The position numbers and the translations under genes are program-made. Positions 1 through 23,814 of a stretch of DNA of 24,203 bases are shown piece after piece. How positions within the stretch are numbered: the stretch's first letter is position 1; every line of letters begins with the position of its first letter. The notes under the pieces are model-generated. The model searched no databases. It was not told where the DNA came from and saw only the letters and a program-made list of their open reading frames with translations. Source of the DNA: Macrostomum lignano (taxonomy: Eukaryota); the NCBI GenBank assembly GCA_002269645.1, contig NIVC01003748.1:1-24203 (forward strand), written 5' to 3'.

Positions 1-713
1 GTATTACGTGCACACGCCAGCCCTGAATACCAAGCCATACTAGTCTACCTGCAGTGCTCCCAGAGGGAAGGATGGTCAGAGTTACACACAAGAATGCATT
101 CATACAAAGAGTACACAACTCGAGCCCAGACACCAAGTCACAGTCTACTTACAGTAGAGATGGTAGATTAATAGCAAGATTATATTACAATTAGACCTCC
201 CTAGCACATGAGGAGTGAAATTCAATAATAATTGAATTCAATAATAATACAACATTTAGACGTAGTAATTTAATTACAAAATACCACTAACACTGAGCCA
301 ACGAATTGTAGGTTACAAAGGAGTATCGTTTTTGTCTATGTTTTAATAATATACACCTGCATTATACTGGCTTTCCATATGAGTGGCAACTCCTTTGTAA
401 CCTACAATTCGTTGGCTCAGTGTTAGTGGTATTTTGTAATTAAATTACTACGTCTAAATGTTGTATTATTATTGAATTCAATTATTATTGAATTTCACTC
501 CTCATGTGCTAGGGAGGTCTAATTGTAATATAATCTTGCTATTAATCTACCATCTCTACTGTAAGTAGACTGTGATTGGTGTCTGGGCTCGAGTTGTGTA
601 CTCTTTGTATGAATGGATTCTTGTGTGTAACTCCTGACCATCCCTTCCCTCTGGGAGCACTGGGTAGACTAAGTATGGCTTGGTATTCAGGGCTGGCGTG
701 TGCCACGTAATAC
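1..713. repeat. Long inverted repeat (palindrome): arms 1-324 and 389-713, 64-nt spacer 325-388
   Basis: Read directly: the reverse complement of 389-713 matches 1-324. It is identical over 138-324, with 7 differences (6 indels, 1 substitution) in 1-137. Confidence 0.97.
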
Positions 714-729
714 TCTGTAATATTTACCG

Positions 730-2580
730 GACTCGGGTGGGGAAGCTCGCTGTACGGCTCTCTCCGTGGGGTGTGATTCACCGCCTCTCTGTCCCGCGCC
801 TCCTGCCAGGCAGCTCTCTGTCCCTCCGCGGGTGACTTACACACCTCTCTGTCCCGCGCGCGTGCTGCGACGCCGGGTAGCGTCCTCTATCTCCTACTCT
901 CCACGCACTCTCCACGCCTCTCTGTTCCCCCTCTGCTGGGGGCTGGTTGTCGCCTGTACAGGGCAGCGTCAGCATCTGGTTTCCTTCCTGCACCGTCTAC
1001 CCCACCACATATACTGACTAACCGCATGCACACGACATTGTGGGAGGGCGGAGTTCCCACTGACGGGTGTACACCTACTCGACGCTGAAGGTACACTTGC
1101 TGAACGCCCACCTTGTCAGATGTACACTTGCTGAACACCCATCCTGTCAGATTACACTCGCTGGACGCCTGCCGGATGTACACCCCGGTGACTAATTCGC
1201 TTACTTTTCTATTAAAATATTGCCATTTATTATGTCTGCTTTTTATTTCAATTTTATATGGTTTGAAGGTTTATTTTGCTGTAATACCTAGTTTCTTATA
1301 AAAATCTACTCTCGACGATGGTTGTGTTGGCTATTTCATTAAAATAACCTGCTTTTGAATAAAACGTTGTATTTAAGCCTCCAGTTTTTTTTCAAAATCA
1401 TAATGGAAACCCTCCCGACACCCCTGGAACCTCCTCGAGCAGCTTACATAGAGCTTGCAGACCCTCGAAACCCCTCTAGTGTGCCCTGATTTCAGCGGTC
1501 TAGAGGTTAACATCTGAATTTTTACACTATATTTTCCTTACATACAGCAATACAGGAGGGTCTGGAAGAGTGAGTCTGGCGGGAGAGGGGGCTTGTGGGA
1601 TGATGAGGATGTGTACACTGTTTAGCAGTTTTAGCCTACCTTTTGGGCTAATATACTTACTATTATTACTACTATTATACCTACTATGTACATACTATTA
1701 TACTACCCACTATTAAATATGCGGCACTAAAACCAACTTTTGATAATACATAGCGTGTTTTGGTGGATTCTCCCTCACGTCTCTGTCCCTACACATGTGC
1801 TTTTTAGTATTCTCTGTTTGTGTACCTCTCTGTAACGTCTCTGTACGCTCAGACTGGTTTCTCCGTCCCCGCGCGCGCCTCTACTAAAGTTTGCTGTTAC
1901 CTACCCCTACACACTGCTCTCTGTCTCCCTCCGCGCACACCTCTCTGCCCTTGCATGCAACTTGCATGTCTACTCCCCTGTCCTGCCCTCGCGTGGGTCC
2001 CTGTCTATACATAGCTACCAGACCCTACCTCTCTCTGTGCCTTGCTCGCAACTCTGTCCCAGGCCCCCCTTCATACTTCTCTGTCCCGGGCTGCAACTGG
2101 CTGACACGCGCCTCTCTGTTCCCCAGCCTGCGTGGCTGCCTACCCCTGCACACTGCTCTCTGTCCCCCTCCGCGCCTCTCTATCATCCTATTCCTGCAGC
2201 TGACCGTGCCGTTCAGCTCTGTCCACGCACGGCTCCACCCCTGCCCGTGTCTCACTGTACCGCCCTGTGTGGCTCCCTTACCCTGCGCGTTTGCTCCCCA
2301 TCTCCCTCCTGCTCGATATGTTTCTGTTCCCTCACACTACGCACACGTGGCTGGCTCTCTGTCCAAACACATCTCTGCTCCTCCACTCTATCCTCGCGTG
2401 GCCCCTTGACGGTTCGCATGCCCCTGCATACCCTGCCTGCCTCTCTGTCCCCTGCAACTGGGGAGGGAGCTCTCTATCCTCTGTATGGCTTTCTCTGTGG
2501 GGTGTGTGTGACTCACACTACCTCTCTGTCCTAGCATGCGCCTCTCTATCCGGCTCCTGTAGCAGGCTGTGTTGTTCACA
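730..2580. repeat. Degenerate modular repeat with recurring CTCTCTGTCC core, in two related blocks (~730-990 and ~1780-2580)
   Basis: CTCTCTGTCC-like cores recur every few tens of bases. Segments ~735-795 and ~945-985 are diverged copies of ~2460-2530 and ~2615-2645. Confidence 0.75.
1538..1575 (-). CDS. Possible terminal (7th) coding exon of the VWA/Cys-repeat gene, encoding (H)SLFQTLLYCCM*
   Basis: Pyrimidine-rich acceptor CCCCCTCTCCCGCCAG on the minus strand (AG at 1577-1576). Its phase (1) is compatible with the GTGAGT donor at 3749, and minus-strand AATAAA motifs lie downstream near 1225-1280. No homology support. Confidence 0.3.
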
Positions 2581-3012
2581 TCTCTTTCCACCCACCCTCT
2601 GCCCGTACACGCTCAGTGTACAGGGCTGCGTCAGCATCGGGGTTAAAACTTCTCGCTCCCTATGCTTCAACAGTATAACAACCTAGTGGCTGGTTCTCTG
2701 TCCACCCACCCCTCTCTGCCCGTACACTCTCACTGTACAGGGCTGCGTCAGCATCAGGGTTAAAACTTCTCGCTCTCTATGCTTCAACAGTATAATAACC
2801 TAGTGGCCGTCTCTCTGTCCACCCCCCCTTTCTGCTCGTACACGCTCATTGTACAGGGCTGCGTCAGCGTTAGGGTTGAAACTTCTCGCTCTCTATGCTT
2901 CAACAGTATAATAACCTAGTGGCCGTCTCTCTGTCCACCCCCCCCTTTCTGCCCGTACACGCTCATTGTACAGGGCTGCGTCAGCGTTAGGGTTGAAACT
3001 TCTCGCTCCCTA
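2581..3012. repeat. Tandem repeat, ~114-117-bp unit, about 4 copies (last truncated)
   Basis: Unit CTCTCTGTCCACCC...GTACAGGGCTGCGTCAGC...AAACTTCTCGCTC...TATGCTTCAACAGTATAA(C/T)AACCTAGTGG starts near 2581, 2695, 2811 and 2927. Confidence 0.95.
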
Positions 3013-3320
3013 TACCCCACAACCGTGTAGTGTCCTAGTATGGGCGCGACCTGGGTTCGATTTCGCTAGTTGAGATGTAGGTGAGAGAGGGGAAGAGGCC
3101 CGTATCGATGACTACATATCGGTGTACACACATATCGGGAGAGTGTACACTCGGGGCGCCTGCTGCATACATATCAGTGTACATATAGGGAGAGTGCGCA
3201 TACATATCGGGAGGGGCGCCTGAGGCGGGGAGGGCGCCTGCGGCATACATGTCGGGGGAGGGCGCGTGCGGCGGGGAGGGGCGCCTGCGGCATGGACGCC
3301 TGCTGCTCTGGAGGGTGCGC

Positions 3321-3380
3321 TTGGGATCTGATTGATTTGGGATCTGATTGATTTGGGATCTGATTGATTTATTGGGATCT
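3321..3380. repeat. 16-bp tandem repeat TTGGGATCTGATTGAT, 3 copies plus a partial copy
   Basis: Exact copies at 3321, 3337 and 3353. Confidence 0.95.
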
Positions 3381-3555
3381 AATATCGGGAGGGTGCGCCT
3401 GCGGCGCTTGGCGCCTGCGGCGCGCGCGCGCGCCGAGCGCCGATATCGATACGGGTATCGATCACCTAGTGATCGGGGCGCCAGCCAATGAGAGGCGAGG
3501 AGGGTTGACACCCACCTCACCTCCAAAATCAAGCCTTACGGGTTCATATAGTAGT

Positions 3556-3714
3556 GTCACTTCCTGAATCTCGGTCACTCTATGCTACTGAGTCACTTCT
3601 TGAATCTCGGTCACTCAATGCTACTGAGTCACTTCCTGAATCTCGGTCATTCAATGCTACTGAGTCACTTCTTGAATCTCGGTCATTCAATGCTACTGAG
3701 TCACTTCCTGAATC
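3556..3714. repeat. 36-bp minisatellite, ~4.4 copies
   Basis: Unit GTCACTTC(C/T)TGAATCTCGGTCA(C/T)TC(T/A)ATGCTACTGA; the C/T variant alternates between copies. Confidence 0.95.
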
Positions 3715-3741
3715 CCTTATTTTAAAAGCAAACTGCAAAAG

Positions 3742-6700
3742 TCACTCACGGTACTCGGATTGAAGTCGGCAAGGCCGTTGAAAAGTTTTCAGGCTCTTGT
3801 AGCACCGGCCGCCCCTCAGCCTGTAGAGGGTCACCGTCACCTGCTGATAGCCGCGGACGCATGGCCCGAACTGCCTGCTGCCGCTGCCTTGGCAGGCTGG
3901 CGAGTTCGAAATTATTGATTTCAATTATTCATACTCATCTTTGTAAGTCGCTTAGCACATGGAGTGAAAGTCAGTGAGTTAGCGCAAAGTCATCACAAGC
4001 TATAGCCCAACTGTCAGGATGACCTCCCCGCCCAACTGTCAGGATGACCTTCCCGCCCAACTGTCAGGATGACCTCTCCTCCCTACTGTCAGGATGACCT
4101 CCCCTTCCATCTGTCAGGATGACCTCCCCTCCCAACTGTCAGGATGACCTCCCCTCCCAACTGTCAGGATGACCTCCCCTCCCAACTGTCAGGATGACCT
4201 CCCCTCCCAACTGTCAGGATGACCTCTCCTCCCTACTGTCAGGATGACCTCCCCTTCCATCTGTCAGGATGACCTCCCCTCCCAACTGTCAGGATGACCT
4301 CTCCTCCCTACTGTCAGGATGACCTCCCCTTCCATTGTCAGAATGACCTCCCCTCCCAACTGTCAGGATGACCTCCCCTCCCAACTGTCAGGATGACCTC
4401 CCCTCCCAACTGTCAGGATGACCTCCCCTCCCAACTGTCAGGATGACCTCCCCTCCCAACTGTCAGGATGACCTCCCCTCCCAACTGTCAGGATGACCTC
4501 CCAAACTTCTGATCGTCTGACCCCCGATCTCTGATCAGGAGGCAGCTCCCATTTCCTACCTGAGCAATTCTCTTTCCGCATGTTGAAAACGTGGTGACAG
4601 TAGGTGTCGTTGATCCTGGTGAAGGTGGTCACCACGACAGTGCGCTGGCGGTTAATGCAGGGTCCGTAGCGGGTGAGCGGGGAGCGGTCGCCGCAGCTCT
4701 CGCAGCCAGTGGTCTTGAAGATGTCGTTGGGATTCGTGCAGTTGCATCTGATGGCTGTGAATGTAGAGTGGTTGAGATCAAGCCCCTGGCCATGGGTTTT
4801 TTGGTGGAGGTTGCAAAATCAAGAATCCTAGACGTTAGTACTGATTTTTTTGGCAATGAAGGGACTTATTTTGGCGCCTGAAGAGAAGTTCTAGATTTTC
4901 ATAACAGGTCACGAGGTGGTGCCGGGGCGAAAGCATAGACATGCCCCCATAGCTTTAATCGGGGGGGGCATGTCCTTCCGCTGGTGATGCCCCTGGTGGA
5001 GATAGGGCGCATTCAGTGTCACTGTGACGAGACTTCAGATCTGCTGAAGAGATACATATGTTGCAATTTATGTATACTATGAAATACTGTGAGGTACGGC
5101 GCAGTTTCATCGAAAACAATGCCTTTGAAGCGAGTAGCATCACCGAGATATCAATAACTAGAAACATCAAGAAACCCACATGTGACATACTAAAAGTGGG
5201 GGTTGAACCTCGGCTTGTTTGCCTTGGTCAATGGGCCCCTCTGCCAGCATTCCATGTGCACAGACTTTTCTTTCTTTTATGCTGTCTTCTTTTAAGGCGG
5301 CATCTTTCCGGGTATGAGAGAGATTTTACAACCTAAATTTTACACGTCTACTTTTCTCAGTATAGTCTAAATAGAACGTCACACCACCCAATCCATCCCA
5401 TTCTATGCTAGAACCCAATAGAGAAGACTCGAATTTGGTATCTCAGTGTTTCTAGTCAGGTAAGCCGACAAGAAATCGTTTCGATGTAGTTGGACCCAGA
5501 GCGCAAAGTTCGGGCTCCATTTTGTGCTCAATTCACATCCAATTTGATGTTAAATAAATAATTTTAAGAGTATGAAGACCGCGAGTTATTTAGCGTTTCT
5601 CAACTCACTGTTATTGGTGCCGTTAACGCACACGGACCCCGGCGGACACACAAAGGACTCGCAGCCGGTGGCCCTGCCGCAGGCCTCAGTCTGGGTGGTC
5701 ACGGACTCCGTACAGTCGCTGTTGTTGTCAGGCCGGGAGTACACAAAGGTGGAGATTCGAATGAATCCGTTGACGCATTCGCTTCGCTCAACTCGATTTG
5801 GAGGGCAATCTGATGGCGATGAGAGTTAGCTGGTGACTTATGCGAATATTTTGGCACTTTTGACCTGAGAGCCACTCCCAGTCCCCTGATTCTGTCTGTT
5901 TAAGCATGTCAGCCACTACTTAGAAGTGCTGTGCATTTAGCTGTCATCAGCAGCGTCTCACAGAGTTCGCCAATTCTAACCTACAATAATTTCACACCCC
6001 TTCGAGTAAGCGCGAGCATAAATGTGCGTGTGGATGCATAAGCACGACTCGTGCAGGCTGCATGCAGTGGCTCTGACTTGCTCCTGGCCTTCTAGATTTC
6101 GTGGGCTTTGCTCAAGGCGCAAGAAAACGATGCAAAACGGCTTTGCTACAGCCCCTTTACAATGTAGTACAATCCACGATCATCCATAAGAATACTTTAA
6201 AATTGAACTGTTGTTAAAAAGCAATAAAAAGAGGGCTTACCACACGGCTCGAACGAAATCGCTAACTTTCTGATGCAATTGTGCGGCAACTCCTCCGATC
6301 GATTGTAGAAGAAGCGCTGCACCTGCGCCCGGCCCCGGACTGTACAGTTGTCATAGGTGGTCCAGGACAGCGGGCACGGACAGAACACCTGGGCGTAGGC
6401 CTCGGTCTTGGTGAGGACTTCAACAATGTTAAACGCGTCGAAGATGCCACGCGTTCCGTCGCTAGCGATTCTGTAGAGCTCTTTGCTGCAGGAAGTGCGT
6501 TAGAGAGACAAGAGACGGTTACAAAACTTAATTTAGGGATGGAATTTGATGAAATAATCAAGATGAAGCAGACAAGAATCGAAGCAAAAGTCTTCCCCAC
6601 TCAAACGCTAGCAAAAATGAGACTGCCTGCAGTTCAATCAACTCACGGAGAGGCTCCGCCCGCCAGGTTGACTGCAAATACGTGCGAGGCAACACGGCGC

Positions 6701-7329
6701 AGTTGCGTCGACGCGGCGAACGTGCGGTGAGTGCCAGCGTTTCGGTCGCCACCCACTGCCACCACAGCCAGCAGCTTGCACTTGCGTCTTCCCACCTCAA
6801 CCAGCTGGTGGTGGTACTTGGCGAGCAGGTGCTTGGCAGCCAGCATGGCGTCTCCCGTGGCGATTCCGTCGAACCGCGGAAGCTGGGACAGCAGCCGGTT
6901 GAGCTTGCGCTGCACCAGCGTCAGATTGCGCGTCACCGGTATCGTGTGCTCGACCTTCTTGGAGAAGGCTACAAAGCCGACGCCGATGTCGTTCTCAGTG
7001 AGGAGGCGGGCGCGAGCGACAACAGCAGTCATCTGCTGCTGATAGGCTGTCAAGCTGTCGAAGTCTTTGCGCTGCAGGTTCAGCACTATAACGTAGTCAG
7101 CGTTGCCGCACTTGACCACGGGGTCCCTCACCGTGGGTGACAGACCAGTCTTGGGATGGGCGCTAATTTTGTTGAAAAAATGAAAAAGGACCATTTCTAG
7201 TAGTGTTACAGTGTAGATGCATATAGTAATCAAAACTGCTTACTTAGAGTAGTATCAAACTCACCGGACAGTTGACAGTAGCGCAGTGGCAACCAGCATG
7301 AGACTGGTAGCCGACGCTAGCATCCTCAT
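3742..7329 (-). CDS. Secreted VWA + divergent TSP1-like Cys repeats + EGF-like protein; exons 7329-7265, 7162-6647, 6485-6241, 5809-5609, 4754-4560, 3896-3742 (or 3896-3750 if spliced on); ~458-468 aa
   Basis: All five introns are GT-AG with matching phases (2,2,1,1,1). Signal peptide [26 protein letters not shown]-fold motifs [48 protein letters not shown]-like [24 protein letters not shown]. Four 4-Cys repeats such as [44 protein letters not shown]. Confidence 0.85.
4006..4503. repeat. 25-bp intronic minisatellite, ~20 copies
   Basis: Unit CCCAACTGTCAGGATGACCTCCCCT; the 25-nt period was verified (AGGATGACCT at 4141 and 4191). It lies in intron 5 of the VWA gene. Confidence 0.97.
4938..4974. 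repeat. Short hairpin GACATGCCCCC-(15 nt)-GGGGGCATGTC next to a CAGGGGCATCACCAG motif (minus strand); possible DNA-transposon/MITE end remnant
   Basis: The 11-bp perfect inverted repeat is seen directly. The transposon interpretation rests on general resemblance only, and no partner TIR was found. Confidence 0.4.
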
Positions 7330-8040
7330 TGCTATCGATGCGATTGCTCAGTCCGTCTGAACAGATTAGTAAGAGATTCTAGTAAAATATAGGCTGAAGT
7401 TTCCCAATCTGGTTGAATGGGAGAACTCTGACTCGAATTTTTATTCAGCCACTGTTTTCGATTTTCGCTTTTATAAACTATTGAGACTGGAAGGAAACGC
7501 CCTGACGCCCGAGAATACGCTGACAAAGCAGTTTTCGAATGCGCTTGATTTCAGCTGCCCCTGAAACTGCTGCTAGTCAGATAGTGAGGTCAGTAGAATC
7601 ATCTGTAAGTCACGGCCCATCTGCTTTCAATGCATAATCCATACCGATATGCGCATGCGTTCTCTTGTTATCCACCTTTTAAGTGCAGAGCTATCCTCCA
7701 ATAAATAAGTCGAGTGGCATAAGGCGGCTGTTTATCACCTGCGAAAAATTGAATCGTGACAATTCATTGGTATTTGGAGTCCACAAAAGGCACAAATCAT
7801 GTTTTGCGATGCAATTTTTTTCGACTATTGATTTCGGATTGCTGCAGACGATTATTTTGAAATTGCTTTGTTACTTCGTTTTCTCTTTTAGATCATACAA
7901 TCATACATGTCAGGGGCGGACCCAGGGGGGGGGCGTATTCGCCTTAATCGCCCTAAAATTTCGCTTCTCCAATTCTTAAAAAACTAAGTGAAATAGGCGA
8001 CTAATCTCGACGAATTACGTTCACTAAGAGACAGCGGCGC

Positions 8041-8044
<4 letters not shown>

Positions 8045-8137
<93 letters not shown>
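8045..8137. repeat. (AG)n microsatellite with two AC interruptions
   Basis: Seen directly. Confidence 0.99.
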
Positions 8138-8138
<1 letters not shown>

Positions 8139-8295
8139 GCCCACCAAGAGACAGTGACGCCCACCAACAAGAGACAAGGGCGCCTTCTGAGAGACAGTGA
8201 CGCCCACCAAGAGACAGGGGCGCCCACCACGAGACAGTGATGCCCACCAACAAGAGACAAAGGCGCCCTCTGAGAGACAGTGACGCCCACCAAAT
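8138..8295. repeat. 20-23-bp minisatellite with higher-order structure (CGCCCACCAAGAGACAGTGA family)
   Basis: Monomer variants recur in the order A-B-C-A'-A''-B-C-A. Confidence 0.9.
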
Positions 8296-8864
8296 ACTGG
8301 CAAGGGTTGCGGCCCCCTCTTATAAAAAAATCTTGCCCATGCCATGCTAATACACGTACAACTTCCGATGCATTAGACTATGCTGTACATGTACTTTAGT
8401 TTCAAAGCTCAATTCTACAAGTGACGGAAATGTGCTCGCGATCATCTGTGAGGGCTCGTGATATTATGTACTTTTATAGCATGCCCTTTCTATACTGCAT
8501 TACGGGAACCCGTTCAAACTCCAAGATGGTTACAGTGGACCAGTTACGAAGTACCATTCGAACAGTGTCGTAATTCATCCTGATGGGGTATATAAGATGC
8601 CGAGAAACATGGAGCTAACGCAGGCTTGCTGTGTGTTGTTAGTGAATTTACACTTTTCCCATTTTGGATTGCTGCTCCCATTTTCGTTCGCATGTCCGCG
8701 ATTGGAAAAGTGGAATCTGGACAGGATGTGTTGGACGGTTCCGCATTAAAGAGCTTCTCGAGTAAGAGAAGGTCCAAGCTGTCCAAGCTGCATAAGTTAT
8801 CGATCAAAATACAAAAACAGCAAAATACGCTGTCAAGGTCTTTACGAGTAAACGGCAGCTTCAC

Positions 8865-9065
8865 ATGTCGCGCCTTTGAGCCACGTTGCGAACGAAGGCC
8901 ACGCCGCCGACCGAGTCCGAGGCGCCAGCGTCAGTCTCCGATCTTGAAGGCGGCGCGGCATCTACTTGTCGCTCGAGCAAGTCCGCTGTACAGCAGGACG
9001 GTCTCGACCACCGCCTGGAACAACACTAGTACCTCGGACTGCAGGACTGCCCTCACGAACGGAAG
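8865..9065 (-). mobile_element. Decayed 3' fragment of a non-LTR retrotransposon (LINE) ORF2
   Basis: Minus-strand segments VRAVLQSE..LFQAVVETVLLY, then (frameshifted) LERQVDAA, AAFKIG and DAGASDSVGGVAFVRNVAQRRDM*. These resemble the post-RT region of RTE/L2-like LINEs (xxVESVLLYxxETW type motif); recognised from memory, not by search. Confidence 0.6.
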
Positions 9066-9984
9066 TCAGCTTAGACAAGCTTTTCACTATGTCGTGACTT
9101 CACTCAATCACAACACAAAGGTGGCATGCACAAAACGGGTGCTCTAGAGGCTACACTTTACATTTAACCTGTTAATGGCTCCGATTGAAGCACGTGCTTA
9201 CAAACAGGTACATATTGCACGTTTTTTAACCGAATTTTTCTGCATTTCAATCGGCCAGAGCCTCACAGACTTGCGAAAGCAATTAGAAAATCAGTTCTTG
9301 AACAGGGCGTCACTCCAGAAAGGCGATTGATGTAGTGGCTTTTAAAACTGAGTATCTTTTCGTCATTGCTGGTAAAACGTATTTCTGGCTGTGCAGTCTA
9401 ATAAAAATTGTATATTTTGTTCGGATAATAAATTGACTGATAAAATGTATTATGCTTTAATTGATTTCATTTCAGCAATTCACCAGACAATTACTAATAG
9501 ACTAATTGAAGCTTAGAGCTGTTCTGGTGACTCTAAAATTGCCAATTATACAATAAAACAATCTAAAAAATACTAGTGTGCATCAATATTGTAACAGTAC
9601 ACAATATAGTACCATAAAATGCTTCGCTATGACACTAGAATAAGACACAAAAGCAGCATAAGACGAAGAGCTTCTTAAACTAATCGCTTCTTTGATTATC
9701 TCAAGCCGAAAGACACTAAATAAGCTGCTATGGCATAGGATGTATTGAGCAATTGGCTAAAATACTTTCCTTGCAAAATAGTGCAGAGGTGACGCCACTC
9801 ATAACCGGAAACAACAAAGTGTAAAATTGCAATCTCACACGACAACATCTTTGTATATCAGGAATAAATATTGATTGCAAAAATCAGTTTTAGTAAAAGT
9901 AAAATCATGTCTAAGTTGAGTCGTACAGTTGAAATAGTCATTAAAATAAATAAAACTGCTTGATAAATTAGTCAGCAAGGCAGT

Positions 9985-11261
9985 TCAAAGAAGTTCAAGC
10001 CGCACACTCAGTATCCTCCAGAGCAGCAGCAGCATCACAGAGCCAACAGCCGAGCTGAAGCCAGCAGCTTTTAGCGCCACAGCAGCGTTACAATTTCTCT
10101 TGTCGCAGAAGCAGAGCTGGCCGTTGCGTCGGGACTCGTCGATGCAGACCAGGTAGGGCGACACCTTCTTCAGCCGCAGGTTCTTTGAACAGGTGCGCCG
10201 CACCCGGGAACTGCCGTCTGAATGGCGATATTGTGCTTGCATGATTAAGTCGCTGCTGTCACTGATGCCGCAGTCTGGCGTGCCCGCTCATCCTGCTCAC
10301 ACCTGAGCACACCCTCACACGGATACGTACTCAGGCACAATACACCTTTTATGAGCGTCACACGAGTCACACGAGTCCCAGGCTAACATTAGCGCATATT
10401 AATGTAATATAATAGTTATTTACATATAATAGTTGATTACACCTGCCCTAATGGGCAGATGTGCAACCGACAGCTCAGCCGCAGCTATTGCATGGCGCAT
10501 CTAGGCTGCGTACAACTGTTCAGGCCAAGGACTGGGAGGTCGCCACACACCCTCAATTACCCCAGGTAATGCTGGCATCCATTTGAACTGAAGCGTGAAG
10601 TGTTAAATGTCCTCTTGCTCAAGGATACAAATTGTTCCAAGTGGGTCGAGAATAAAACCCCCGACCTTTCAGTCGTAAGTCCGACGCTCCAACCACTACA
10701 CTAAAACCCCTGACTCTCGCATGAAACTCGACATTATAGTGGTCTGAAACGAATGGAATTCGGGATCTGATGTGAGCTTGGTATGCGGTACCGCTCAGTT
10801 TAGTTTACTATCGCCCTGATAGCTAACTTGTGCTCATGTTGACCTGAGAGAAGAGAATTAGCCCTTACCAGCGTATCTGTGCACCCATTTGGAGCAGACG
10901 CCGCCGCAGCGCACTGACGGAACCAAACCGCGCTTGACCAGGGACACGTCGAAGGGGTCGCGGCATCGGCTGTCGTACAGCGAGTCGCATTCCACACAGT
11001 CCATGTTCTGGTCTAACACAGTATAGGTAAGCATAAATTAGTTTATAAAGTACATAGTTTAAACCTAAGAGTACACATATTGTGAATTTGACCCTACTAA
11101 AGATTAGAGCTCATGCAATATTTATAATATATTGGGGAAAGTAATACATTAACTCGTTAAACACCTTTGCAATGGTCTGGATCGGAAGCAAAAGATGCCG
11201 TTGACAGACCAGCATACACCAGCTGCACCAGAATCAATAAATATTTCGCTGTGCAGTTCAT
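9985..11261 (-). CDS. Ly6/uPAR three-finger protein, quiver/sleepless-like, probably GPI-anchored; exons 11261-11165, 11012-10869, 10217-9985; 157 aa
   Basis: Both introns are GT-AG, phase 1. Signal peptide MNCTAKYLLILVQLVYAGLSTASFA. LU domain with 10 Cys: DCVECDSLYDSRCRDPF...RCGGVCSKW...VRRTC...VC...LCFCDKRNCN. It ends in NAA, a spacer and a hydrophobic tail (GPI-signal-like). The exon 1 donor (GTGTTT) is weaker, so exon 1 is less certain. Confidence 0.85.
10405..10710 (-). mobile_element. tRNA-headed SINE with CORE-like central domain, in intron 2 of the Ly6 gene
   Basis: On the minus strand: A-box TAGTGTAGTGG, tRNA-like GCGTCGGACTTACGACTGAAAGGTCGGGGGTT, and a degenerate B-box. Then TGTATCCTTGAGCAAG..TTAAC..TTCAGTT, which matches MIR/CORE TGTGACCTTGGGCAAG..TTAAC..CTCAGTT at 13/16 in the first block. 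The 3' end has a hairpin CTGCCCATTAGGGCAG and a duplicated AACTATTATAT tail. Confidence 0.7.
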
Positions 11262-12384
11262 GCCTGCAATCAGGAAAGAAGATCAATGATTTTGAGAGTG
11301 GACATCGTTGGCTTGTACAAAATTACCATGTGAATAGTTTAATTTCTTACATTATACTTAGTAATCACACAATTTATAATCTTATCTGCTTGTTATATTT
11401 TTAACTGCACCAGGCATGGCTCAATGTAGCAATTTCATTCAGTGATAGTTTAAATCTAAATCCTTGATGAAAGTAAGTATACTGTATCTATATTTTATCT
11501 TATAGTCTATAACAAATGAATCAGATTAGTTACTCCATAAGTTCTCATCATTTGATTTAAAATATGTCTATTTTAATTTTATTTAAAACGAGAGGAAAGG
11601 CCTGATGTAAAATCTAAGAATATGCAATTTGTGGATCAAAAAAGTGATTTAAGTTTTTGTAATCTATTTTAGCCATATATGAAGTTTCAACTGCTTTGCT
11701 TATATATTCAGAGCTACAGCCAAAAGTTGTTATTGTTATTATTACTATTTTTACGACGCTAGCCAGTTCTAGCGAGCACATGCTGTTTGAACAGCCAGAG
11801 CTGGGAAAATTTTTGATGTAGAAAAGAGGCTGGCTCCATTTTTTTCATTTAGTGGTTTTCTCTCATGAATAATAAGTGAAAGTTGCATGTTAAATTAAAA
11901 TTCATGTAACCTAACACAAGACACTGACATTTAAAAATACATCATTTAGTTAAATTTGAATGCCCTAGAAAAGAATTTTTTACATTTTAAGCATTGTTGA
12001 CGCCTTTGGCTTTAAAATAAATTAAAACAAGTTAATTTATGAAATTAATTATGAGCTTGCCATCTACATTAGTTTTTTCAGTCGGCATTATAGATATTAG
12101 GCTATTAAAAGTTTAAAGTTCTTTACATTTATTCTGTATAAATCAATGAATTCATTTAAGTTAAAGTTTTGAAGCTGAAAGGCCAATAGGCCGATAATCT
12201 ATATTTTATTATTTTAATTATTATAATTTTATATACTCGATAATAGAAAAAATAACTTGAAAAAAAGTCTTTATCTGATAGCACTTTCATTTTATGCATT
12301 TAGTTTGCTTTATTTTTTGTAAATATAATAAATATTTTTTAAATTTAGGCTTCTATCACATCCCTTACTATGGCTTATTCTTAC

Positions 12385-12417
12385 TAATTAACCCCTAATT
12401 AACCCCTAATTAACCCC
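12385..12417. repeat. 11-bp tandem repeat TAATTAACCCC x3
   Basis: Seen directly. Confidence 0.9.
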
Positions 12418-13614
12418 AATGCATTATTAACAAATTCTCTATTGAAAACATCATATAGGCGGTAGGCCCCTAACAAAAGTAAATATAAGGATCATGCTTT
12501 AGTAAGCTACAATTGTAGCATTTTTGCAATCATGGCTGTCTGTTTTAATTCTTACTATTTTTCATTGGGTATCGTATAATGAAATTGATGCAAGTAATCA
12601 ATTGTCTTACAGGTAGGCTTATCGTAAAATGAAAGAATGCCTATCAGTCTAGATTAGATAATAGGCCAAGCCTGCCAATTAAAGTTGGTGCAGGATAATA
12701 GATTGGCACATCAATTATCTATACAAAATTTTGTTTTCTATCTATAAAGTTGTATTAATTGCATAAGTCTAATCTAGTTTATAGCCTATACTATTTATTA
12801 ATTTGTTTATAATTAGGCACCTAGAACTTCTATTTAAGGTTTTTAATATTTAAATCATCTATTAGTTTTATAAATTTTTATATTAGTTGTATTTATTTAT
12901 ATCAATTATTTGATTAATTTAATTATGCATATTTTATAGAATTCACAGATTCTTAGAATATCTACTGAATGAGCCACTTAGCATATTTGCATGTAAGTTA
13001 CTTCAATTTAGTAGTAATTTAAACTATAGCATTTTAAGTTATTTTTAAATCCAAGCTTTATTTATTGTCTTTTACACCCTAAGCTTAAACCCTTAAACTC
13101 CATACAGATTATAAAACCTTTATCCCTGCCTTGCCACCCAATTTTTATTACTTTCTTTAATTGTTCTGCCTAAATCTGCCCTGTATATTTCAATGGCTAA
13201 TGCATATATATCTGAACCAATTGGCAATTGTTTATGTCTATAAGCTTAGGCTTCTAAACTTATCAAAGTCATTTTAGCTGCCTCTATTCTTATAAAAGTA
13301 TAAGAGTATAAAAGTATAATGCCTGATTTGGATCACAGTTTTGGTTTTCTTGGCATGTCTTAAAGTTTGCGACCTACCTAGGCTCAAGTTATTGCATGAT
13401 TCAGCAAATTCTCTACAATTATAAAGTCTTATAATAAGTTCTAATAATACGGATATCTTACTTTTGCTCGATCACAAAAGATGAAAGCTGGTATATCATG
13501 ACACACTGTTACTCGAAAATAAAACCTAGGGTACTCGCCATTGAAGAGACTGGAGTGAGTGAGTTCATCTGCTCAAGTACATAAAAAATCTGCCCTCCCC
13601 AGCTTGCAAGCCGC

Positions 13615-16600
13615 ATGGAAGACAGCGACGCGCCAATCCTGCAGTTCCTGCAGTCCCGGGTTGCCAACCTGGACGAGGACTTCAGCCAGTACCTGCACAG
13701 CCTGCTGGCCGACGGTGTCGACGACTTCGTCAGCGGCGCCGACATCGAGGCTGCGATTGGCGACTTCTTGCACGAAGCCGACGCCAACCAGACGCCGGAG
13801 TCTGTGCGCGACATCTGCGAGGCCATCTACACCAGATTCTGCTCCGGCGCCGCTTCTGCCGACTCTGCGGCCGACGCCGCTGCTGACTCCGGCGCGTCGG
13901 CTGGCAGTGCGACAGCCAATGGCGACGCGGCGGGTCCGGAGCGGCTGCGCGCGCCTGTGCAGCTGGGCGAGCTGCACTCTGCTGTGGCCGACAGCGGCGG
14001 AGGGCTCGGCGGCGGCGGCAGCAACGGCGGCGGCATCTGGATGCAGCGCAAGTCTGAGAACAAGCTCATCAATGTTGAAGCCTCGCTAGCCAGCGACCCC
14101 AAGGCTGCCAAGCGGCTGATGAAGGCCAACAATGCGTCCTCCAACTCGCTCACTTCGCAGGACGAGTGCGGAGCTTCCGTGAGTCTGTGTAGGGAGATGG
14201 GGTGATATTTGTATAGGGATTTGGGGAGTTCTGAAAGAGATTTGTAAGTGGATATTAGGGACTCGGAAGTTCATAATGATCTTTCCAGTAGGAATACCCC
14301 CTATAGGAAAAAGTTGTAAAACCGCGGACGGTGTCCGGCGCACTTTTGAAATTTTTCTAAAGCGCAGCGCGCGCACAGGCGCAGCGCCTGCGCGCGCTGC
14401 CCTTTCTTACTGGCTGCTGCTCTAGCAAATACATATACATGGGGATGGGTATAATACCTCTGTTGAAGGGGCTTATACACTCGTAATTTATTAAGCTTAG
14501 AGATGTTCCGAAAATTCAATTTCAATTTTCCAAAATTTGAAATTTTTTAGAGCAAATTTCAATTTCGAAATAAAATTTAGAAGTGTCGAAAATTGTCTAA
14601 ATTTAAAAATTTTGAAAATTTTGGTAGTGTCTAAAAAGTCGCTAAAAATAAACTACTTTCTACTACATATACATGTATTACTTTTTGCTTAAGCAGTAAA
14701 TTGAAAGTAAAAAAGTGAGTGTTGATCATACTAAACTTTGTTTTTCTGAATTATGATTTCGGGAAATTTCAATTTTGATTTTGGAAAGTTAGCGAATATT
14801 GATTTCGACGAAACTGCAGATCTTTCGGAACATCTCTAATAATCCTAAAGCGCGGTAAAATAGTTTGACTCTTTTCTAAAGCGCGCGTCCGCGGGTTTTT
14901 AACATTTATTCCAATAGGGGGAATACCAAGCCATTTTACCGGGCACAGTCACCCGGTGCCATCCGTTGAAGGTCCAGAAGTCAGAGCTGATTCAGACACC
15001 TGTCGTCGACGAGCTGGTGAAATTTGAAGACTTGTAAAAAATTCGACTTTCTGGCAGAATTTTTTAATATCTCGACGCGGTCCGAAAGGCTGGCGACTTG
15101 ATTATTGTTTGCGAAGGTGCGCGACAACAAAAAGGTTCGCTCGTGCCCTTCAAATTCGTGCGCCTGCGTTGCTTCCGTTCGAGCGCAGCAAAAAATTGTC
15201 AACTCCCTCACCCCCTTGGCCGTTCTACTAACAGATTAAAACAAAGTGGCTCAGAGATCGTAAAATTGGAGTTCAAACTATTCCGGACATCCGCAGGTGA
15301 GCCAGCAGCTTAATCGCAAAGACGCCGCTCTGGACGGCGAGTCGGGCCGCGTGCGCGATATTCGCGTTGAAGGTCTGGACATCGCCTTCGGCAGTCGGCA
15401 GCTGCTGGAGGGCGCCAACCTCACTCTGGCCAGCGGCAGGCGCTACGGCTTTGTTGGCCGGAACGGGCTGGGCAAGACCACCCTGCTGAAGCTGCTGAGC
15501 ACCAGGCAGATCAGCGTGCCATCGCATATCCGTGTGCTGCACGTGGAGCAGGAGGTGAGTAGCTGGGCTGCGGATTCACGGTTTCTGTATCTGCATTCAC
15601 AGTTTCTGTATCTGCATTCACAGTTTCTGTATCTGCATTCACGGTTTCTGTATCTGCATTCACGGTTTCTGTATCTGGATTCACGGTTTCTGTATCTGCA
15701 TTCACGGTTTCTGTATCTGGATTCACGGTTTCTGTATCTGCATTCACGGTTTCTGTATCTGGATTCACGGTTTCTGTATCTGAATTCACGGTTTCTTTAT
15801 CCGCATTCACGGTTTCTGTATCTGGATTCACGGTTTCTGTATCTGAATTCACGGTTTCTTTATCCGCATTCACGGTTTCTTTATCCAAATTCACGGTTTC
15901 TTTATCCGCATTCACGGTTTCTGTATCCGAATTCATGGTTTCTGTATCCGAATTCACGGTTTCTGTATCCGAATTCACGGTTTCTGCATCCGCATTCACG
16001 GTTTCTGTATCCGAATTCACGGTTTCTTTATCCGCATTCATGGTTTCTGTATCCGAATTCACGGTTTCTTTATCCGCATTCACGGTTTCTGTATCCGAAT
16101 TCACGGTTTCTATATCTAGATTTACAATCTCTAGATGAGGAGTCTAAATGACCTGAAGCTGAGCCACTCACATTCTCCCCAACCCGCCGGGCTTCCCCAA
16201 TCCCAGGTGGCAGGTGACGATACTCCGGCAGTCGAGAGCGTCCTGCAGGCCGACGAGCAGCGGGCCCGCCTGCTGGCCGAGGAGGCGCGCTGCCGCGCCG
16301 AGCCAGACGCGCCAGGCGCCGCCGACCGCTTGGCCGCCCTGTTCGCCGAGCTGGCCGCGATCGAGGCGGACAAGGCGCCGTCCCGGGTCGCCAGCATCCT
16401 GCACGGCCTGGGCTTCACGCCGGCGATGCAGACCGTGCCCACAAAGCAGTTTTCCGGCGGCTGGCGAATGCGACTGGCGCTGGCCAGGGCGCTGTTTGCC
16501 AAGTGAGTGCTGAAAAGCGCGAATCTCTGCCTTTATTTTAGTTTTGCCATGAAGGAATATCACTTTTAGCCTCTCCACCGAAGCCTGGAAATAACTGGGC

Positions 16601-19499: not shown

Positions 19500-19880
19500 C
19501 ATTGCCAACATGCAAGCATGCCTAGTCAAGAACTGCTTTCACCCTTGGCTTGATAATTGCCACCGTTGATCTTTGAATCCCTTCTGAGGTGGCGAATCGG
19601 CTTCTTGTTCCCTTCTTTAACGTTTTTGCTTGTCTGCCCATTTGCCTTTGCAACCAAATCAAATGATATCTTAAATTTATCGTTGCATGTCCCCAACATT
19701 CTACTGCTGACCAATGGCAGTAGTATGGTTGGAATTTTTATCTATTATTTATTTCTCATATTTGTCGTGCCTGTCCGAATATCAGAAAGCATTATTTTGT
19801 TGCATGCTGCAAAGCTTCCTTGCAAAATCGGCACTTTGACCATGCATTTACTGCCATGTGTGACTGCAGTGCCCCGGGTT
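19500..19880 (-). mobile_element. Possible heavily decayed hAT-type transposase remnant (BED-finger-like segment)
   Basis: Minus-strand pieces WSKCRFCKEAL and, in another frame, TGTTNMRN resemble the BED finger pattern CxxC...GTTNLxxH. They are broken by stops and frameshifts; weak. Confidence 0.3.
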
Positions 19881-20056
19881 TGATGACAGATTAAATATAC
19901 ACCGCTTTAGAGCATGAGAATTTGAATTCGAGCCAGCTCGACTTTCATGAGGAATCTTCTTATCCATATTTGTTGCAAGATTGCACTTGCTTTCTTTGAT
20001 GATTGCAAAACCAAACTGCTCATTTTATCGTTGCTTTTCATGCTTGCAATCGATAA

Positions 20057-21125
20057 GGTTTGGGGAGAATGGATGGGGGATTTGAGGAGTAGGGATGGTG
20101 GATTTGAGGAGTAGGGATGGGGATTTGAGGAGTAGGGATGTCGGATTTGAGGAGTAGGGATGGTGGATTTGAGGAGTAGGGATGGGGGATTTGAGGAGTA
20201 GGGATGGTGGATTTGAGGAGTAGGGATGGGGGATTTGAGGAGTAGGGATGGCGGATTTGAGGAGTAGGGATGGGGGATTTGAGGAGTAGGGATGGGGATT
20301 TAAGGAGTAGGGATGGCGGATTTGAGGAGTAGAGATGGGTATTTGGTGAGTAGGGATGCGGATTTGAGGAGTAGAAATGGCGGATTTGAGGAGTAGAAAT
20401 GGCGGATTTAAGGAGTAGAGATGGGGATTCGAGGAGTAGAGATGGATGGGGGATTTGAGGAATACGTAAGGGGATTTGAGTGGTAGGGATGCGGATTTGA
20501 GGAGTAGGGATGTGGATTAGAGGAGTAGTGATGGGGATTTGTGGAGTAGGGATGGGGATTTGAGGAGTAGGGATGAAGATTTGAGGAGTAGGGATGCGGA
20601 TTTGAGGAGTAGGGATGGCGGATTTGAGGAGAATGGATGGGGATTTGAGGAGTAGGGATGGGGATTTGAGGAGTAGGGATGGGGATTTGAGGAGTAGGGA
20701 TGGGGATTTGAAAAGTAGGGATGGGGATTTGAGGAGTAGAAAGAGTAGAAAGGATGAGGAATGGCAGATTTGAGGAGTAGGGATGGGGATTTGAGGAGTA
20801 GAGATAGATAGGGATTTAAGGAGTAGGATGGATGGGGATTTGAGTAATAGGGATGGGAATTTAAGGAGTAGAGATGGGGATTCGGAGTGAGATAATTTGA
20901 GGAATACGTAAGGGGATTTGAGTGGTAGGGATGCGGATTTGAGGAGGGGATGGGGATTTGAGGAGTTGGGGGAAGTAGGGATTTGAGGAGTAGGATGGGG
21001 ATTTTGGGATGGGGATTTGAGGAGTTGCGGAGTAAAGGAAGGATGGTGGATTTGAGGAGTAGGGGATTTGAGGAGTAGAGATGGGGATTTGAGGAGTTGG
21101 TGGTAAGGATGGGTCAAGAATGAGG
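20057..21125. repeat. ~22-bp G-rich minisatellite (GATTTGAGGAGTAGGGATGGGG), roughly 45-50 copies
   Basis: Seen directly; the plus strand is almost free of C. Confidence 0.96.
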
Positions 21126-21155
21126 GGGAATAATCTGATACTGGGGTAATAATCT

Positions 21156-21346
21156 CCACTCCGCCCGGGTCAATCCGCCCCAATCTGACCCACTCCCGCC
21201 CGGGTCAATCCGCCCCAATCTGACCCACTCCCGCCCGGGGTCAATCCGCCCCAATCTGACCCACTCCCGCCCGGGGTCAATCCGCAATCTGACCCACTCC
21301 CGCCCGGGTCAATCCGCCCCAATCTGACCACTCCGCCGGGGTCAAT
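21156..21346. repeat. ~35-bp C-rich minisatellite (CCACTCCCGCCCGGGTCAATCCGCCCCAATCTGAC), ~5.5 copies
   Basis: Seen directly; copies differ mostly by homopolymer indels. Confidence 0.95.
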
Positions 21347-23528: not shown

Positions 23529-23814
23529 AGGAAATTAGCTCTTCTAATAAAAAAAGTTGAAAAAATCCATGAAAATAAGCCAGAAACACTTCAGTTACAC
23601 TGACGCAAATCATTAAAGAATGTGACTGGAAGTACAGTGCGATCATCATTGTATTGTTCCAAGCGCGACACCAACCAGTAGCATGCCATGAGCCAAGTTT
23701 CACTAACAGTGACAGAGGCAGATCGCAAATTAACAGAGATCAGGAGCCAGCAGCTCAAGCACAGCCAAGAGTGCAGGAGCTTCAAAACTCATTTAAGGAG
23801 GGTGAGAATTCAAG

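What the first reader, a model, noticed from the sequence alone, without database searches (positions are those of the whole stretch)
3742..7329. Unannotated-looking secreted protein: VWA + four divergent 4-Cys repeats + EGF
Seen: after the VWA domain come repeats R1 [11 protein letters not shown]...NC...PC, R2 [15 protein letters not shown]...DC...AC, an EGF-like unit, R3 [18 protein letters not shown]...YC...NC and R4 [17 protein letters not shown]...RC...PC. The shared pattern is C-x(7-10)-C-x2-(G/R)-x-(R/Q)...beta-rich...C-x(10)-C. There are nine N-glycosylation sequons, and exons 4-6 are bounded by phase-1 introns. Established: phase 1-1 modules typify exon-shuffled extracellular domains, and VWA, EGF and TSP1 domains are common in adhesion and matrix proteins. 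Inference: the repeats are Trp-poor TSP1-like modules of the kind I recall in flatworm mucus and adhesive proteins, so this is a candidate lineage-specific adhesive, mucus or glycocalyx component. It is the best candidate for a novel protein in the window.
Basis: partly seen in the sequence, partly recalled or inferred. Interest (0 to 1): 0.7.

Follow-up and report, generated by a model that had tools for sequence, protein, structure and literature searches.

The report
Front end of large flatworm secreted protein

Summary
The six-exon minus-strand model (7329-3742) is correct through residue 456. It equals GenBank PAA49972.1, "hypothetical protein BOX15_Mlig008915g4, partial", from Macrostomum lignano; the window is that whole contig. 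VWA passes Pfam's threshold, the four repeats share more than their cysteines, there are nine sequons, and introns 3-6 are phase 1.

Two sister copies (1875 and 2043 aa) splice on into VWD, TIL-like, two ShK domains and about 25 more copies of the same module. Those distal copies are strongly cationic (net charge +172) and carry no sequons. In this contig the match to the sister locus breaks inside an intron-6 tandem array, so downstream exons are missing.

The module is predicted with high confidence (pLDDT 93) as a three-stranded antiparallel sheet. It is not a Pfam TSP1 repeat. Its closest resemblance is the midkine/pleiotrophin C-domain cysteine framework, but sequence homology is not demonstrable.

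Best reading: a lineage-restricted, multimerising secreted scaffold that binds polyanions. Function and expression site are untested. Interest is moderate.

The parts
7265..7329 (-). Exon 1: ATG at 7329 and a signal-peptide-like [21 protein letters not shown](R). The donor is GTGAGT, phase 2.
   Evidence: identical in GenBank model P0004
6647..7162 (-). Exon 2: bulk of the VWA domain. The MIDAS DxSxS motif is replaced by N-L-Q-R-K.
   Evidence: Pfam VWA PF00092 at 28.7-31.4 bits against a cut-off of 23.8. Alignment to a canonical VWA repeat of P0002. phmmer of this exon against 1.84 billion proteins returned only P0001 and one weak VWA hit.
6241..6485 (-). Exon 3: C-terminal end of the VWA domain plus module R1 (6376-6242). 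The donor is phase 1.
5609..5809 (-). Exon 4 (phase 1-1): module R2 (5807-5679) plus the first four cysteines of the EGF-like unit (5663-5609).
   Evidence: the EGF-like unit rests on its Cys pattern, with only a sub-threshold Pfam hit (EGF_Pikachurin 14.1 bits)
4560..4754 (-). Exon 5 (phase 1-1): last two cysteines of the EGF-like unit (4754-4699) plus module R3 (4695-4564).
3750..3896 (-). Exon 6 (phase 1-1): module R4 (3894-3769). This is an internal exon, not the last one.
   Evidence: AF2 model of R4 with pLDDT 93.1
3742..3749 (-). GTGAGTGA: the splice donor of intron 6.
   Evidence: The sister locus L001 has the identical sequence and splices from here to exon 7, giving ...SEY|QCIGS. The GenBank CDS of this contig stops at residue 456 and is flagged partial.
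4006..4502 (.). 25-bp x 20 tandem array inside intron 5.
   Evidence: about 29 copies in the sister locus
3556..3714 (.). 36-bp x 4.4 tandem array at the start of intron 6. Collinearity with the full-length sister locus ends at its far edge (about 3555).
   Evidence: L001 carries about 26 copies and then exon 7
1..3555 (.). Repeat-rich sequence unrelated to the sister locus. It holds no exon of the VWD/ShK/C-terminal-module part of the gene.
   Evidence: tblastn and blastn found nothing; 117-bp and other arrays

Best explanation
Window 7329-3750 (minus strand) holds exons 1-6 of a Macrostomum lignano gene, the Mlig008915/Mlig019034 cluster.

Architecture of the full product (about 2,043 aa):
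- signal peptide;
- VWA domain without a DxSxS MIDAS motif;
- two 4-Cys modules, an EGF-like unit, then two more 4-Cys modules;
- VWD, a Cys-rich stretch, a TIL-like domain and two ShK domains;
- about 25 further 4-Cys modules.

The module is about 43 aa. It is predicted to be a three-stranded antiparallel beta-meander. By inference, a C1-C3 and a C2-C4 disulfide clamp its two ends.

The four modules in the window are N-glycosylation-rich and mildly basic. The distal ones are sequon-free and strongly cationic.

Most likely mechanism (inferred, not shown): the protein is secreted, forms disulfide-linked multimers through its VWD/TIL region as mucins, VWF and Mlig-ap1 do, and uses the array of basic mini-domains to bind polyanionic glycans or surfaces multivalently. 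That would make it a cohesive, mucus or adhesive matrix component.

In this contig the gene is cut short. Collinearity with the full-length copy ends inside an intron-6 tandem array. The cause is either an assembly break or collapsed haplotype, or a truly truncated duplicate.
For: Gene model and identity:
- The splice model was rebuilt from the sequence.
- It equals GenBank PAA49972.1 'partial' on a 24,203-bp contig, which is the window's length.
- GenBank models for this assembly derive from a genome-guided RNA-seq transcriptome (PMC5730564).

Continuation of the gene:
- P0001 (1875 aa) and P0003 (2043 aa) are 99% identical over residues 1-456 and read on as ...SEY|QCIGS.
- L001 has the same GTGAGTGA followed by a phase-1 acceptor.
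- The ABCF3 neighbour is shared and the two loci are about 97% identical from 3556 to 17604.
- The CDS differs at 11 of 1369 nt, 7 of them synonymous, with no frameshift.

Domains:
- VWA.
- VWD at 1.6e-12.
- ShK at 34.6 bits; TIL at 18.4 bits, sub-threshold but covering the full profile.

Module family:
- HMM cross-detection between the C-terminal and N-terminal modules.
- In the 24-module alignment only the four Cys columns are invariant.
- The AF2 model has pLDDT 93.1 with strands 6-13, 16-27 and 30-41.
- The same three-strand pattern recurs for R1-R4 in the low-confidence multi-module model.

Charge:
- Residues 1079-2043 have net charge +172, 0 sequons and 54 His.
- Residues 229-456 have 8 sequons and net charge +11.

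Analogy: Mlig-ap1 combines VWD-C8-TIL with K/R-rich regions that bind polyanions such as heparin (PMC6410801).
Against: - No expression, localisation or binding data were found, so the function is inference from architecture and charge.
- The exon 6-to-7 junction rests on the Mlig_3_7 transcriptome-derived models at two loci. Older database entries are fragments that start or stop at exon boundaries: P0005 begins at exon 7 and P0007 ends at exon 5. A fusion of two adjacent genes is therefore not strictly excluded.
- Foldseek finds no significant PDB match for the module. The best E-value is 0.27, to generic beta-meander fragments.
- The multi-module AF2 model is poor, with pLDDT 54.9.
- The VWA lacks the DxSxS MIDAS motif, so integrin-type metal-dependent ligand binding is unlikely.
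- Several C-terminal modules share a boundary cysteine with their neighbour, so the simple 1-3/2-4 pairing cannot hold everywhere.
Confidence: 0.55

Rival explanations
1. One reading: a complete 458-aa secreted protein (VWA, four Trp-poor TSP1-like repeats and an EGF unit) that acts on its own as a lineage-specific adhesive or mucus component.
For: An in-frame TGA follows residue 458. In this contig no downstream exon exists. The predicted three-stranded topology is compatible with a TSR.
Against: The TGA is part of a consensus GTGAGT donor that the sister loci use. GenBank flags the CDS as partial at residue 456. No Pfam TSP_1 hit appeared at E <= 10 for the region or for any of 24 modules. 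The modules have 4 Cys rather than 6 and no WxxW motif.
Confidence: 0.08
2. The window copy is a real truncated duplicate rather than an assembly artefact. An insertion or rearrangement in intron 6 removed the downstream exons, and the locus yields a short VWA plus four-module product or is on its way to becoming a pseudogene.
For: Collinearity stops abruptly at 3555, with 3.5 kb of unrelated repeat-rich DNA beyond it. The DV1 genome carries extensive recent duplications (PMC5730564). The exons are intact, with mostly synonymous differences.
Against: The break falls exactly inside a tandem array, a classic site for mis-joins or collapsed haplotigs in a 24-kb contig. The transcript-based annotation ends at the donor with no stop codon, as expected if reads splice to an exon absent from the contig.
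Confidence: 0.25
3. The 4-Cys module is a true but extremely divergent homologue of the TSR superfamily. More specifically, it would be of the midkine/pleiotrophin C-domain type, amplified into an array.
For: The Cys framework C-x9-11-C-x18-22-C-x10-C in about 43 aa matches C-x9-C-x21-C-x9-C of the MK/PTN C-domains; those sequences were verified against PDB 1MKC, 2LUT, 2LUU and 2N6F. Three antiparallel strands are predicted. The composition is basic. One module (CPPSRPIKECDGETG...) hits Pfam PTN_MK_C at E = 0.03, 15.1 bits.
Against: The hit is below the 25.3-bit cut-off, occurs in 1 of 24 modules, and is near the chance expectation for 24 queries. hhalign of the module profile against the MK/PTN profile gives probability 1.2%. 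MK/PTN C-domains score no better against the module HMM than Cys-preserving shuffles (p 0.05-0.18). The profile search of PDB sequences finds nothing. Neither midkine nor any TSR is among the top 50 Foldseek hits.
Confidence: 0.25
4. P0001 and P0003 are chimeric gene models that fuse two neighbouring genes: a VWA gene with four modules and a VWD/ShK/module gene. On this view the window gene would be essentially complete.
For: Older UniProt/ParaSite entries split the region. P0007 covers residues 66-407 and P0005 starts exactly at exon 7.
Against: The same model occurs at two independent loci. The junction is phase-compatible, 1 to 1. The same rare module family lies on both sides of it. There is no in-frame stop apart from the one inside the donor. 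The older entries are fragments that break at introns filled with tandem arrays.
Confidence: 0.1

Closest known systems
[quoted passage not shown]
   Same: It comes from the same species. It is a large, secreted, cysteine-rich protein with a VWD-C8-TIL core and EGF-type units. It has very cationic K/R-rich regions proposed to give cohesion and to be released by polyanions.
   Different: Mlig-ap1's cationic regions are low-complexity G/R/K repeats without cysteines, not folded 4-Cys modules. It has a C-type lectin domain and 17 calcium-binding EGF modules, no VWA or ShK, and its KR regions alone exceed 3,600 aa. The paper's authors found no significant homology of Mlig-ap1 to any known protein. 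This protein is not mentioned in the adhesion papers read.
Midkine / pleiotrophin C-terminal heparin-binding domain (Pfam PF01091; PDB 1MKC, 2N6F)
   Same: It is about 43 aa with four cysteines at nearly the same spacing. It has three antiparallel strands, a basic surface and 1-3/2-4 disulfide pairing (pairing from my own knowledge for MK, inferred here for the module). One module gives a weak PTN_MK_C hit.
   Different: No statistically supported sequence similarity was found. The conserved CKY-F--W-C and Q-T motifs of MK/PTN are absent. MK/PTN carry one N-domain and one C-domain, not an array of about 29 modules embedded in a VWA/VWD mosaic.
Thrombospondin type 1 repeat (TSP_1, PF00090)
   Same: It is an elongated, three-stranded, disulfide-clamped extracellular module. 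R/Q residues sit on the central strand, it is often encoded in phase-1 exons, and it occurs in flatworm adhesive proteins such as Mlig-ap2.
   Different: The module has no WxxW(xxW) motif, four rather than six cysteines, and is about 43 rather than 50-60 aa. All three predicted strands are regular. There was no Pfam match at E <= 10.
VWD-C8-TIL multimerising proteins (gel-forming mucins, VWF, SCO-spondin, sea-star Sfp1)
   Same: The full-length copies have a VWD domain followed by Cys-rich and TIL-like segments, plus long arrays of small disulfide-rich repeats.
   Different: There is a single VWD unit. No PTS/mucin domain, C-terminal cystine knot or VWC domain was detected. This part of the gene is absent from the window.
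VWA + EGF matrix proteins (matrilins, AMACO/VWA2)
   Same: They share an N-terminal VWA domain followed by EGF-like and Cys-rich units in a secreted protein.
   Different: The VWA here is very divergent and lacks the DxSxS MIDAS motif. There is no coiled coil. No orthology was detected.

Membership tests
TSP1 repeat (PF00090) | Match to the family profile | tested here: not met
   hmmscan found no TSP_1 or related hit at E <= 10. This covers the 230-aa Cys-rich region, the whole P0001 at E <= 1 and each of 24 modules.
TSP1 repeat (PF00090) | WxxW(xxW) tryptophan ladder on strand A | tested here: not met
   R1 has a single Trp (SWTTY). R2, R3 and R4 have none. No Trp column is conserved in the 24-module alignment.
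TSP1 repeat (PF00090) | Six cysteines forming three disulfides in 50-60 aa | tested here: not met
   There are four invariant Cys in 41-45 aa.
TSP1 repeat (PF00090) | Three-stranded antiparallel layered fold | tested here: inconclusive
   AF2 predicts three antiparallel strands at pLDDT 93. Foldseek against the PDB gives no significant match, and no TSR is in the top 50.
PTN/MK C-terminal domain (PF01091) | Match to the family profile at the gathering score | tested here: not met
   One of 24 modules hits at 15.1 bits, E = 0.03, against a cut-off of 25.3. None of R1-R4 hits.
PTN/MK C-terminal domain (PF01091) | Four-Cys framework C-x9-C-x21-C-x9-C in about 43 aa | tested here: met
   The modules have C-x9-11-C-x18-22-C-x10-C in 42-45 aa. 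MK/PTN spacing was read from PDB-verified sequences.
PTN/MK C-terminal domain (PF01091) | Sequence similarity beyond the cysteines | tested here: not met
   hhalign probability is 1.2%. The module HMM scores MK/PTN no better than Cys-fixed shuffles, p 0.05-0.18. The profile search of PDB sequences found nothing.
PTN/MK C-terminal domain (PF01091) | Heparin / glycosaminoglycan binding | not testable with these tools
   Only composition is available: net charge +172 and 12 Cardin-Weintraub-type motifs in residues 1079-2043 of P0003.
VWA domain (PF00092) | Profile match above the gathering score | tested here: met
   28.7 bits and 31.4 bits against a cut-off of 23.8.
VWA domain (PF00092) | MIDAS motif DxSxS for metal-dependent ligand binding (a feature of many VWA domains, not all) | tested here: not met
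   The DASTS of a canonical VWA repeat (P0002) aligns around NLQRK, across a four-residue gap. The Pfam alignment starts only at profile position 19.
EGF-like domain | Six-Cys pattern C-x4-C-x5-C-x9-C-x-C-x11-C, and a profile match | tested here: inconclusive
   The pattern is present at aa 325-360. The best Pfam hit is EGF_Pikachurin at 14.1 bits against a cut-off of 27. AF2 gives short hairpins there but with low confidence.
VWD-C8-TIL multimerisation unit | VWD profile match followed by Cys-rich C8 and TIL segments | tested here: met
   This holds in the full-length copies only. VWD scores 48.4 bits. TIL scores 18.4 bits, sub-threshold, over profile positions 1-55 of 55. No exon for it lies in the window.
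Known M. lignano adhesion proteins Mlig-ap1 / Mlig-ap2 | Published domain architecture | tested here: not met
   ap1 has KR low-complexity flanks, a C-lectin, VWD-C8-TIL and 17 EGF. ap2 has two VWD, two TIL, LDLa, 46 long repeats and TSP1 (PMC6410801). This protein has VWA, ShK and 4-Cys modules instead.

The most novel reading that the evidence does not exclude
The 4-Cys unit is a previously undescribed domain family restricted to Macrostomum (or Macrostomorpha). It would be convergent with the TSR/midkine fold rather than descended from it, and amplified to about 29 copies. On this reading the protein is an unrecognised polycationic cohesive component of a flatworm secretion (adhesive gland, rhabdite/mucus or cement gland). 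Its binding to polyanions, and its release by polyanion competition, would parallel Mlig-ap1 but use folded mini-domains instead of low-complexity K/R tracts.
Probability: 0.25. Interest if true: 0.55.

Novelty: new variant of a known kind. Interest (0 to 1): 0.38.

Why it matters
- If the cationic module array binds sulfated glycans or charged surfaces, it would give flatworm bioadhesion or mucus research a second, structurally defined route to polycationic cohesion. This would sit alongside the low-complexity K/R tracts of Mlig-ap1. The mini-domain is only 43 residues and disulfide-stabilised, so it could be expressed and engineered.
- It would add an unclassified repeat family to the domain libraries.
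- For the scan itself there is a practical lesson. A stop codon inside GTGAGTGA, next to an intronic tandem array near a contig end, is a warning that a model is truncated.

Tried and rejected
- The word-index homologue search with the whole model found nothing. With the 24-module profile it found only 14 candidates and no hit, not even P0001. That second search is therefore uninformative about how widely the module occurs.
- phmmer of the model against PDB sequences and the module profile against PDB sequences both returned nothing.
- The Rfam scan and the tRNA scan of the window were empty.
- Foldseek of the module model returned only generic three-strand fragments of OB/S1-type folds, best E-value 0.27. 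I rejected these as meaningless.
- The 228-aa multi-module AF2 model was too poor (pLDDT 54.9) to send to Foldseek.
- The midkine lead came from one Pfam hit. I followed it with hhalign and a shuffle test, and homology was not supported.
- The scallop '4C-repeat' byssal proteins gave no motif in the text to compare with.
- Searches for Mlig008915 and Mlig019034 in the full-text library and in the supplements of four M. lignano papers found nothing, so there are no expression data.
- I considered and rejected identity with Mlig-ap1 or Mlig-ap2.
Full report
**1. What is in the sequence**

Three-frame translation of the minus strand and explicit splice-site placement give six GT..AG exons. They are 7329-7265, 7162-6647, 6485-6241, 5809-5609, 4754-4560 and 3896-3742. 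The CDS is 1377 nt and encodes 458 aa.

- The N-terminus is hydrophobic and signal-like.
- Pfam finds VWA above its gathering score: 28.7 bits for the whole model and 31.4 bits for the isolated domain, against a cut-off of 23.8.
- Four units follow with spacing C-x9-11-C-x18-22-C-x10-C. These are R1 at aa 231-275, R2 at 277-319, R3 at 363-406 and R4 at 409-450. Window coordinates are in the parts list.
- Between R2 and R3 lies a C-x4-C-x5-C-x9-C-x-C-x11-C pattern. This EGF-like unit is supported by pattern only; its best Pfam hit is sub-threshold (EGF_Pikachurin, 14.1 bits).
- There are exactly nine N-x-S/T sequons.
- Introns 3, 4 and 5 are phase 1.

**2. Are the repeats more than chance?**

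Yes.
- With cysteine positions held fixed and other residues shuffled, local alignment scores are z = 5.2 for R3-R4, 3.9 for R1-R2 and 3.3 for R2-R4.
- There is an independent test. An HMM built only from 12 modules in the far C-terminal half of the full-length paralogue detects R4 (7e-6), R2 (3e-4), R3 (3e-3) and, partially, R1 (0.13).
- That HMM gives no hit in the intervening VWD/TIL/ShK region, which has 33 cysteines. This serves as an internal negative control.

**3. Whose gene it is, and where it really ends**

phmmer of the VWA exon against 1.84 billion representative proteins returned two hits. One was a weak generic VWA protein. The other, P0001, is 100% identical over the exon but 1875 aa long.

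P0001 is PAA75931.1, 'hypothetical protein BOX15_Mlig019034g1 [Macrostomum lignano]'. Its 90% cluster also holds two relevant entries:
- PAA91016.1 (Mlig008915g5, 2043 aa, on an 890-kb contig);
- PAA49972.1 (Mlig008915g4, 'partial', 456 aa, on a 24,203-bp contig).

GenBank annotation of this assembly comes from a genome-guided RNA-seq transcriptome (PMC5730564).

After ...RLQSEY the long proteins continue QCIGSALSGGQFLTYDG.... The TGA is inside a consensus GTGAGT donor in phase 1. The sister locus L001 has the identical octamer and splices 1.1 kb downstream into a phase-1 acceptor.

**4. Why the window lacks the rest**

The window and L001 are collinear at about 97% from window 3556 to 17604, including the divergently transcribed ABCF3 neighbour. 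Collinearity ends inside a 36-bp tandem array in intron 6. The window has 4.4 copies (3556-3714), and L001 has about 26 copies followed by exon 7.

Window 1-3555 is repeat-rich. It matches neither the downstream part of L001 nor any exon of the long protein.

The coding exons differ from L001 at 11 of 1369 nt, 7 of them synonymous, and there is no disruption. So this copy is either cut by an assembly break or haplotig collapse at the array, or it is a genuinely truncated duplicate. The first is more likely, given the position of the break and the 'partial' transcript model. The DV1 genome is known to be highly redundant. Long-read mapping would settle the question.

**5. Architecture of the whole protein**

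The order of domains is as follows:
- signal peptide;
- VWA;
- modules R1 and R2, the EGF-like unit, then modules R3 and R4;
- VWD (Pfam 1.6e-12);
- a Cys-rich stretch and a TIL-like domain (18.4 bits, full profile length, sub-threshold);
- two ShK domains (34.6 bits against a cut-off of 20.9);
- about 25 more 4-Cys modules, from aa 891 to about 2035.

The VWA lacks the DxSxS MIDAS motif: the DASTS of a canonical VWA repeat aligns around NLQRK.

The modules fall into two populations:

| Region | Sequons | Net charge | Other |
|---|---|---|---|
| Residues 229-456 (the window's four modules plus the EGF-like unit) | 8 | +11 | |
| Residues 1079-2043 | 0 | +172 | 54 His |

The C-terminal stretch analysed in P0001 (aa 1081-1875) is 24-29% K+R with pI 9.8-10.7.

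Many distal modules share their first cysteine with the preceding module and carry a CxC at the third position. This gives an A-B super-repeat of about 90 aa.

**6. What the module is**

AlphaFold2 was run on R4 with the 24 modules as its alignment. The result is a confident model: pLDDT 93.1, all five models at or above 90.6. It shows three antiparallel strands at residues 6-13, 16-27 and 30-41.

From the strand register, C1 and C3 lie at one end of the sheet and C2 and C4 at the other.

A 228-aa model of R1-R2-EGF-R3-R4 was of low confidence (pLDDT 54.9). It repeats the three-strand pattern in each module.

Foldseek against the PDB gives nothing significant. The best E-value is 0.27, to fragments of OB/S1-like folds. 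No TSR or midkine chain is in the top 50.

Pfam finds no TSP_1-type match at E <= 10 for the region or for any module. The modules also lack the Trp ladder and have four rather than six cysteines. 'TSP1-like' is therefore not supported as membership.

The only suggestive hit is one C-terminal module against PTN_MK_C (E = 0.03, 15.1 bits). The midkine/pleiotrophin C-domain was verified against PDB 1MKC, 2LUT, 2LUU and 2N6F. It has a strikingly similar framework (C-x9-C-x21-C-x9-C in 43 aa) and is a basic, heparin-binding, three-stranded domain. Homology, however, is not demonstrable:
- hhalign probability is 1.2%;
- MK/PTN sequences score no better than Cys-preserving shuffles against the module HMM;
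- the profile search of PDB sequences is empty.

I therefore say that the module looks and probably works like a midkine-C/TSR-type mini-domain. I do not file it in either family.

**7. Likely mechanism**

Shown here:
- a secretory signal-like N-terminus;
- extracellular domain types throughout;
- a VWD/TIL segment of the kind that multimerises mucins, VWF and Mlig-ap1;
- a very cationic, sequon-free array of small disulfide-rich modules.

Inferred: the protein is secreted, forms disulfide-linked multimers, and binds polyanionic glycans or charged surfaces multivalently through the basic modules. The glycosylated N-terminal part that lies in the window, VWA plus four modules, would provide protein-protein contacts.

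The closest functional precedent is Mlig-ap1. Its K/R-rich regions bind negatively charged carbohydrates, and heparin blocks their cohesive function (PMC6410801). By architecture this protein is not Mlig-ap1 or Mlig-ap2.

The tissue is unknown. Candidates include adhesive glands, rhabdites or mucus, cement or shell glands, and prostate. No paper or supplement searched mentions the gene.

**8. Distribution and novelty**

No relative outside M. lignano was found:
- the word-index searches with the model and with P0001 found none;
- the exhaustive phmmer of the VWA exon found only one weak generic VWA hit.

These searches are limited, and the module-profile search failed technically. 'Lineage-restricted' is therefore provisional.

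The gene is already in GenBank and UniProt as a hypothetical 'VWFA/ShKT domain-containing' protein. What is new here is threefold: the recognition of the module family of about 29 copies, its predicted fold, and the charge dichotomy between the two populations of modules.

I rate it a new variant of a known kind, a disulfide-clamped three-stranded mini-domain in a VWA/VWD mosaic protein. Interest is moderate.

Noticed in passing
window ~9985-11010, minus strand: An apparently uncalled Ly6/uPAR gene of the Quiver type. One exon-like ORF reads ...DCVECDSLYDSRCRDPFDVSLVKRGLVPSVRCGGVCSKWVHRYA. Another reads ...RRTCSKN...LCFCDKRNCN and is followed by a hydrophobic GPI-signal-like tail. An approximate join of the two hits Pfam QVR PF17064 at E = 4.3e-7, 31.3 bits (cut-off 27.3), over profile positions 2-86 of 86. 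No gene is called at the matching place in the sister locus L001.
   Followed up: partly
window 13615-18872, plus strand: An ABCF3 orthologue, transcribed divergently from the VWA gene. The sister copy carries Pfam PWI_ABCF3 plus two ABC_tran domains. One of its introns holds a 21-bp x 26 tandem array (15574-16116) that reads as a long open frame.
   Followed up: partly
window 4006-4502 and 3556-3714; L001 12832-13553 and 13917-14867: The intronic tandem arrays differ in copy number between the near-identical gene copies. The 25-bp unit has 20 copies here and about 29 in L001. The 36-bp unit has 4.4 copies here and about 26 in L001. The contig's collinearity with the sister locus ends inside the 36-bp array.
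   Followed up: yes
P0003 (PAA91016.1) aa ~990-1810, outside the window: The C-terminal modules alternate between two subtypes. Type A has its own first cysteine, often in a CPxP motif. Type B shares its first cysteine with the preceding module and has an extra cysteine as CxC at the third position. Together they form an A-B super-repeat of about 90 aa, whose disulfide connectivity must differ from a simple 1-3/2-4 pattern.
   Followed up: partly
window 11000-13500: An AT-rich block (26-31% GC against about 50% elsewhere) lies in the intergenic region between the VWA gene and ABCF3.
   Followed up: no
window 1-3555 and 19500-24203: Both ends of the contig are dominated by tandem arrays. These include a 117-bp x 3.7 array at 2581-3013, a 21-bp x 44 array at 20059-21004, a 19-bp x 27 array at 22034-2548, and others. 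GC skew is strong at 19.5-21.5 kb. This fits the repeat-rich, hard-to-assemble M. lignano genome.
   Followed up: no
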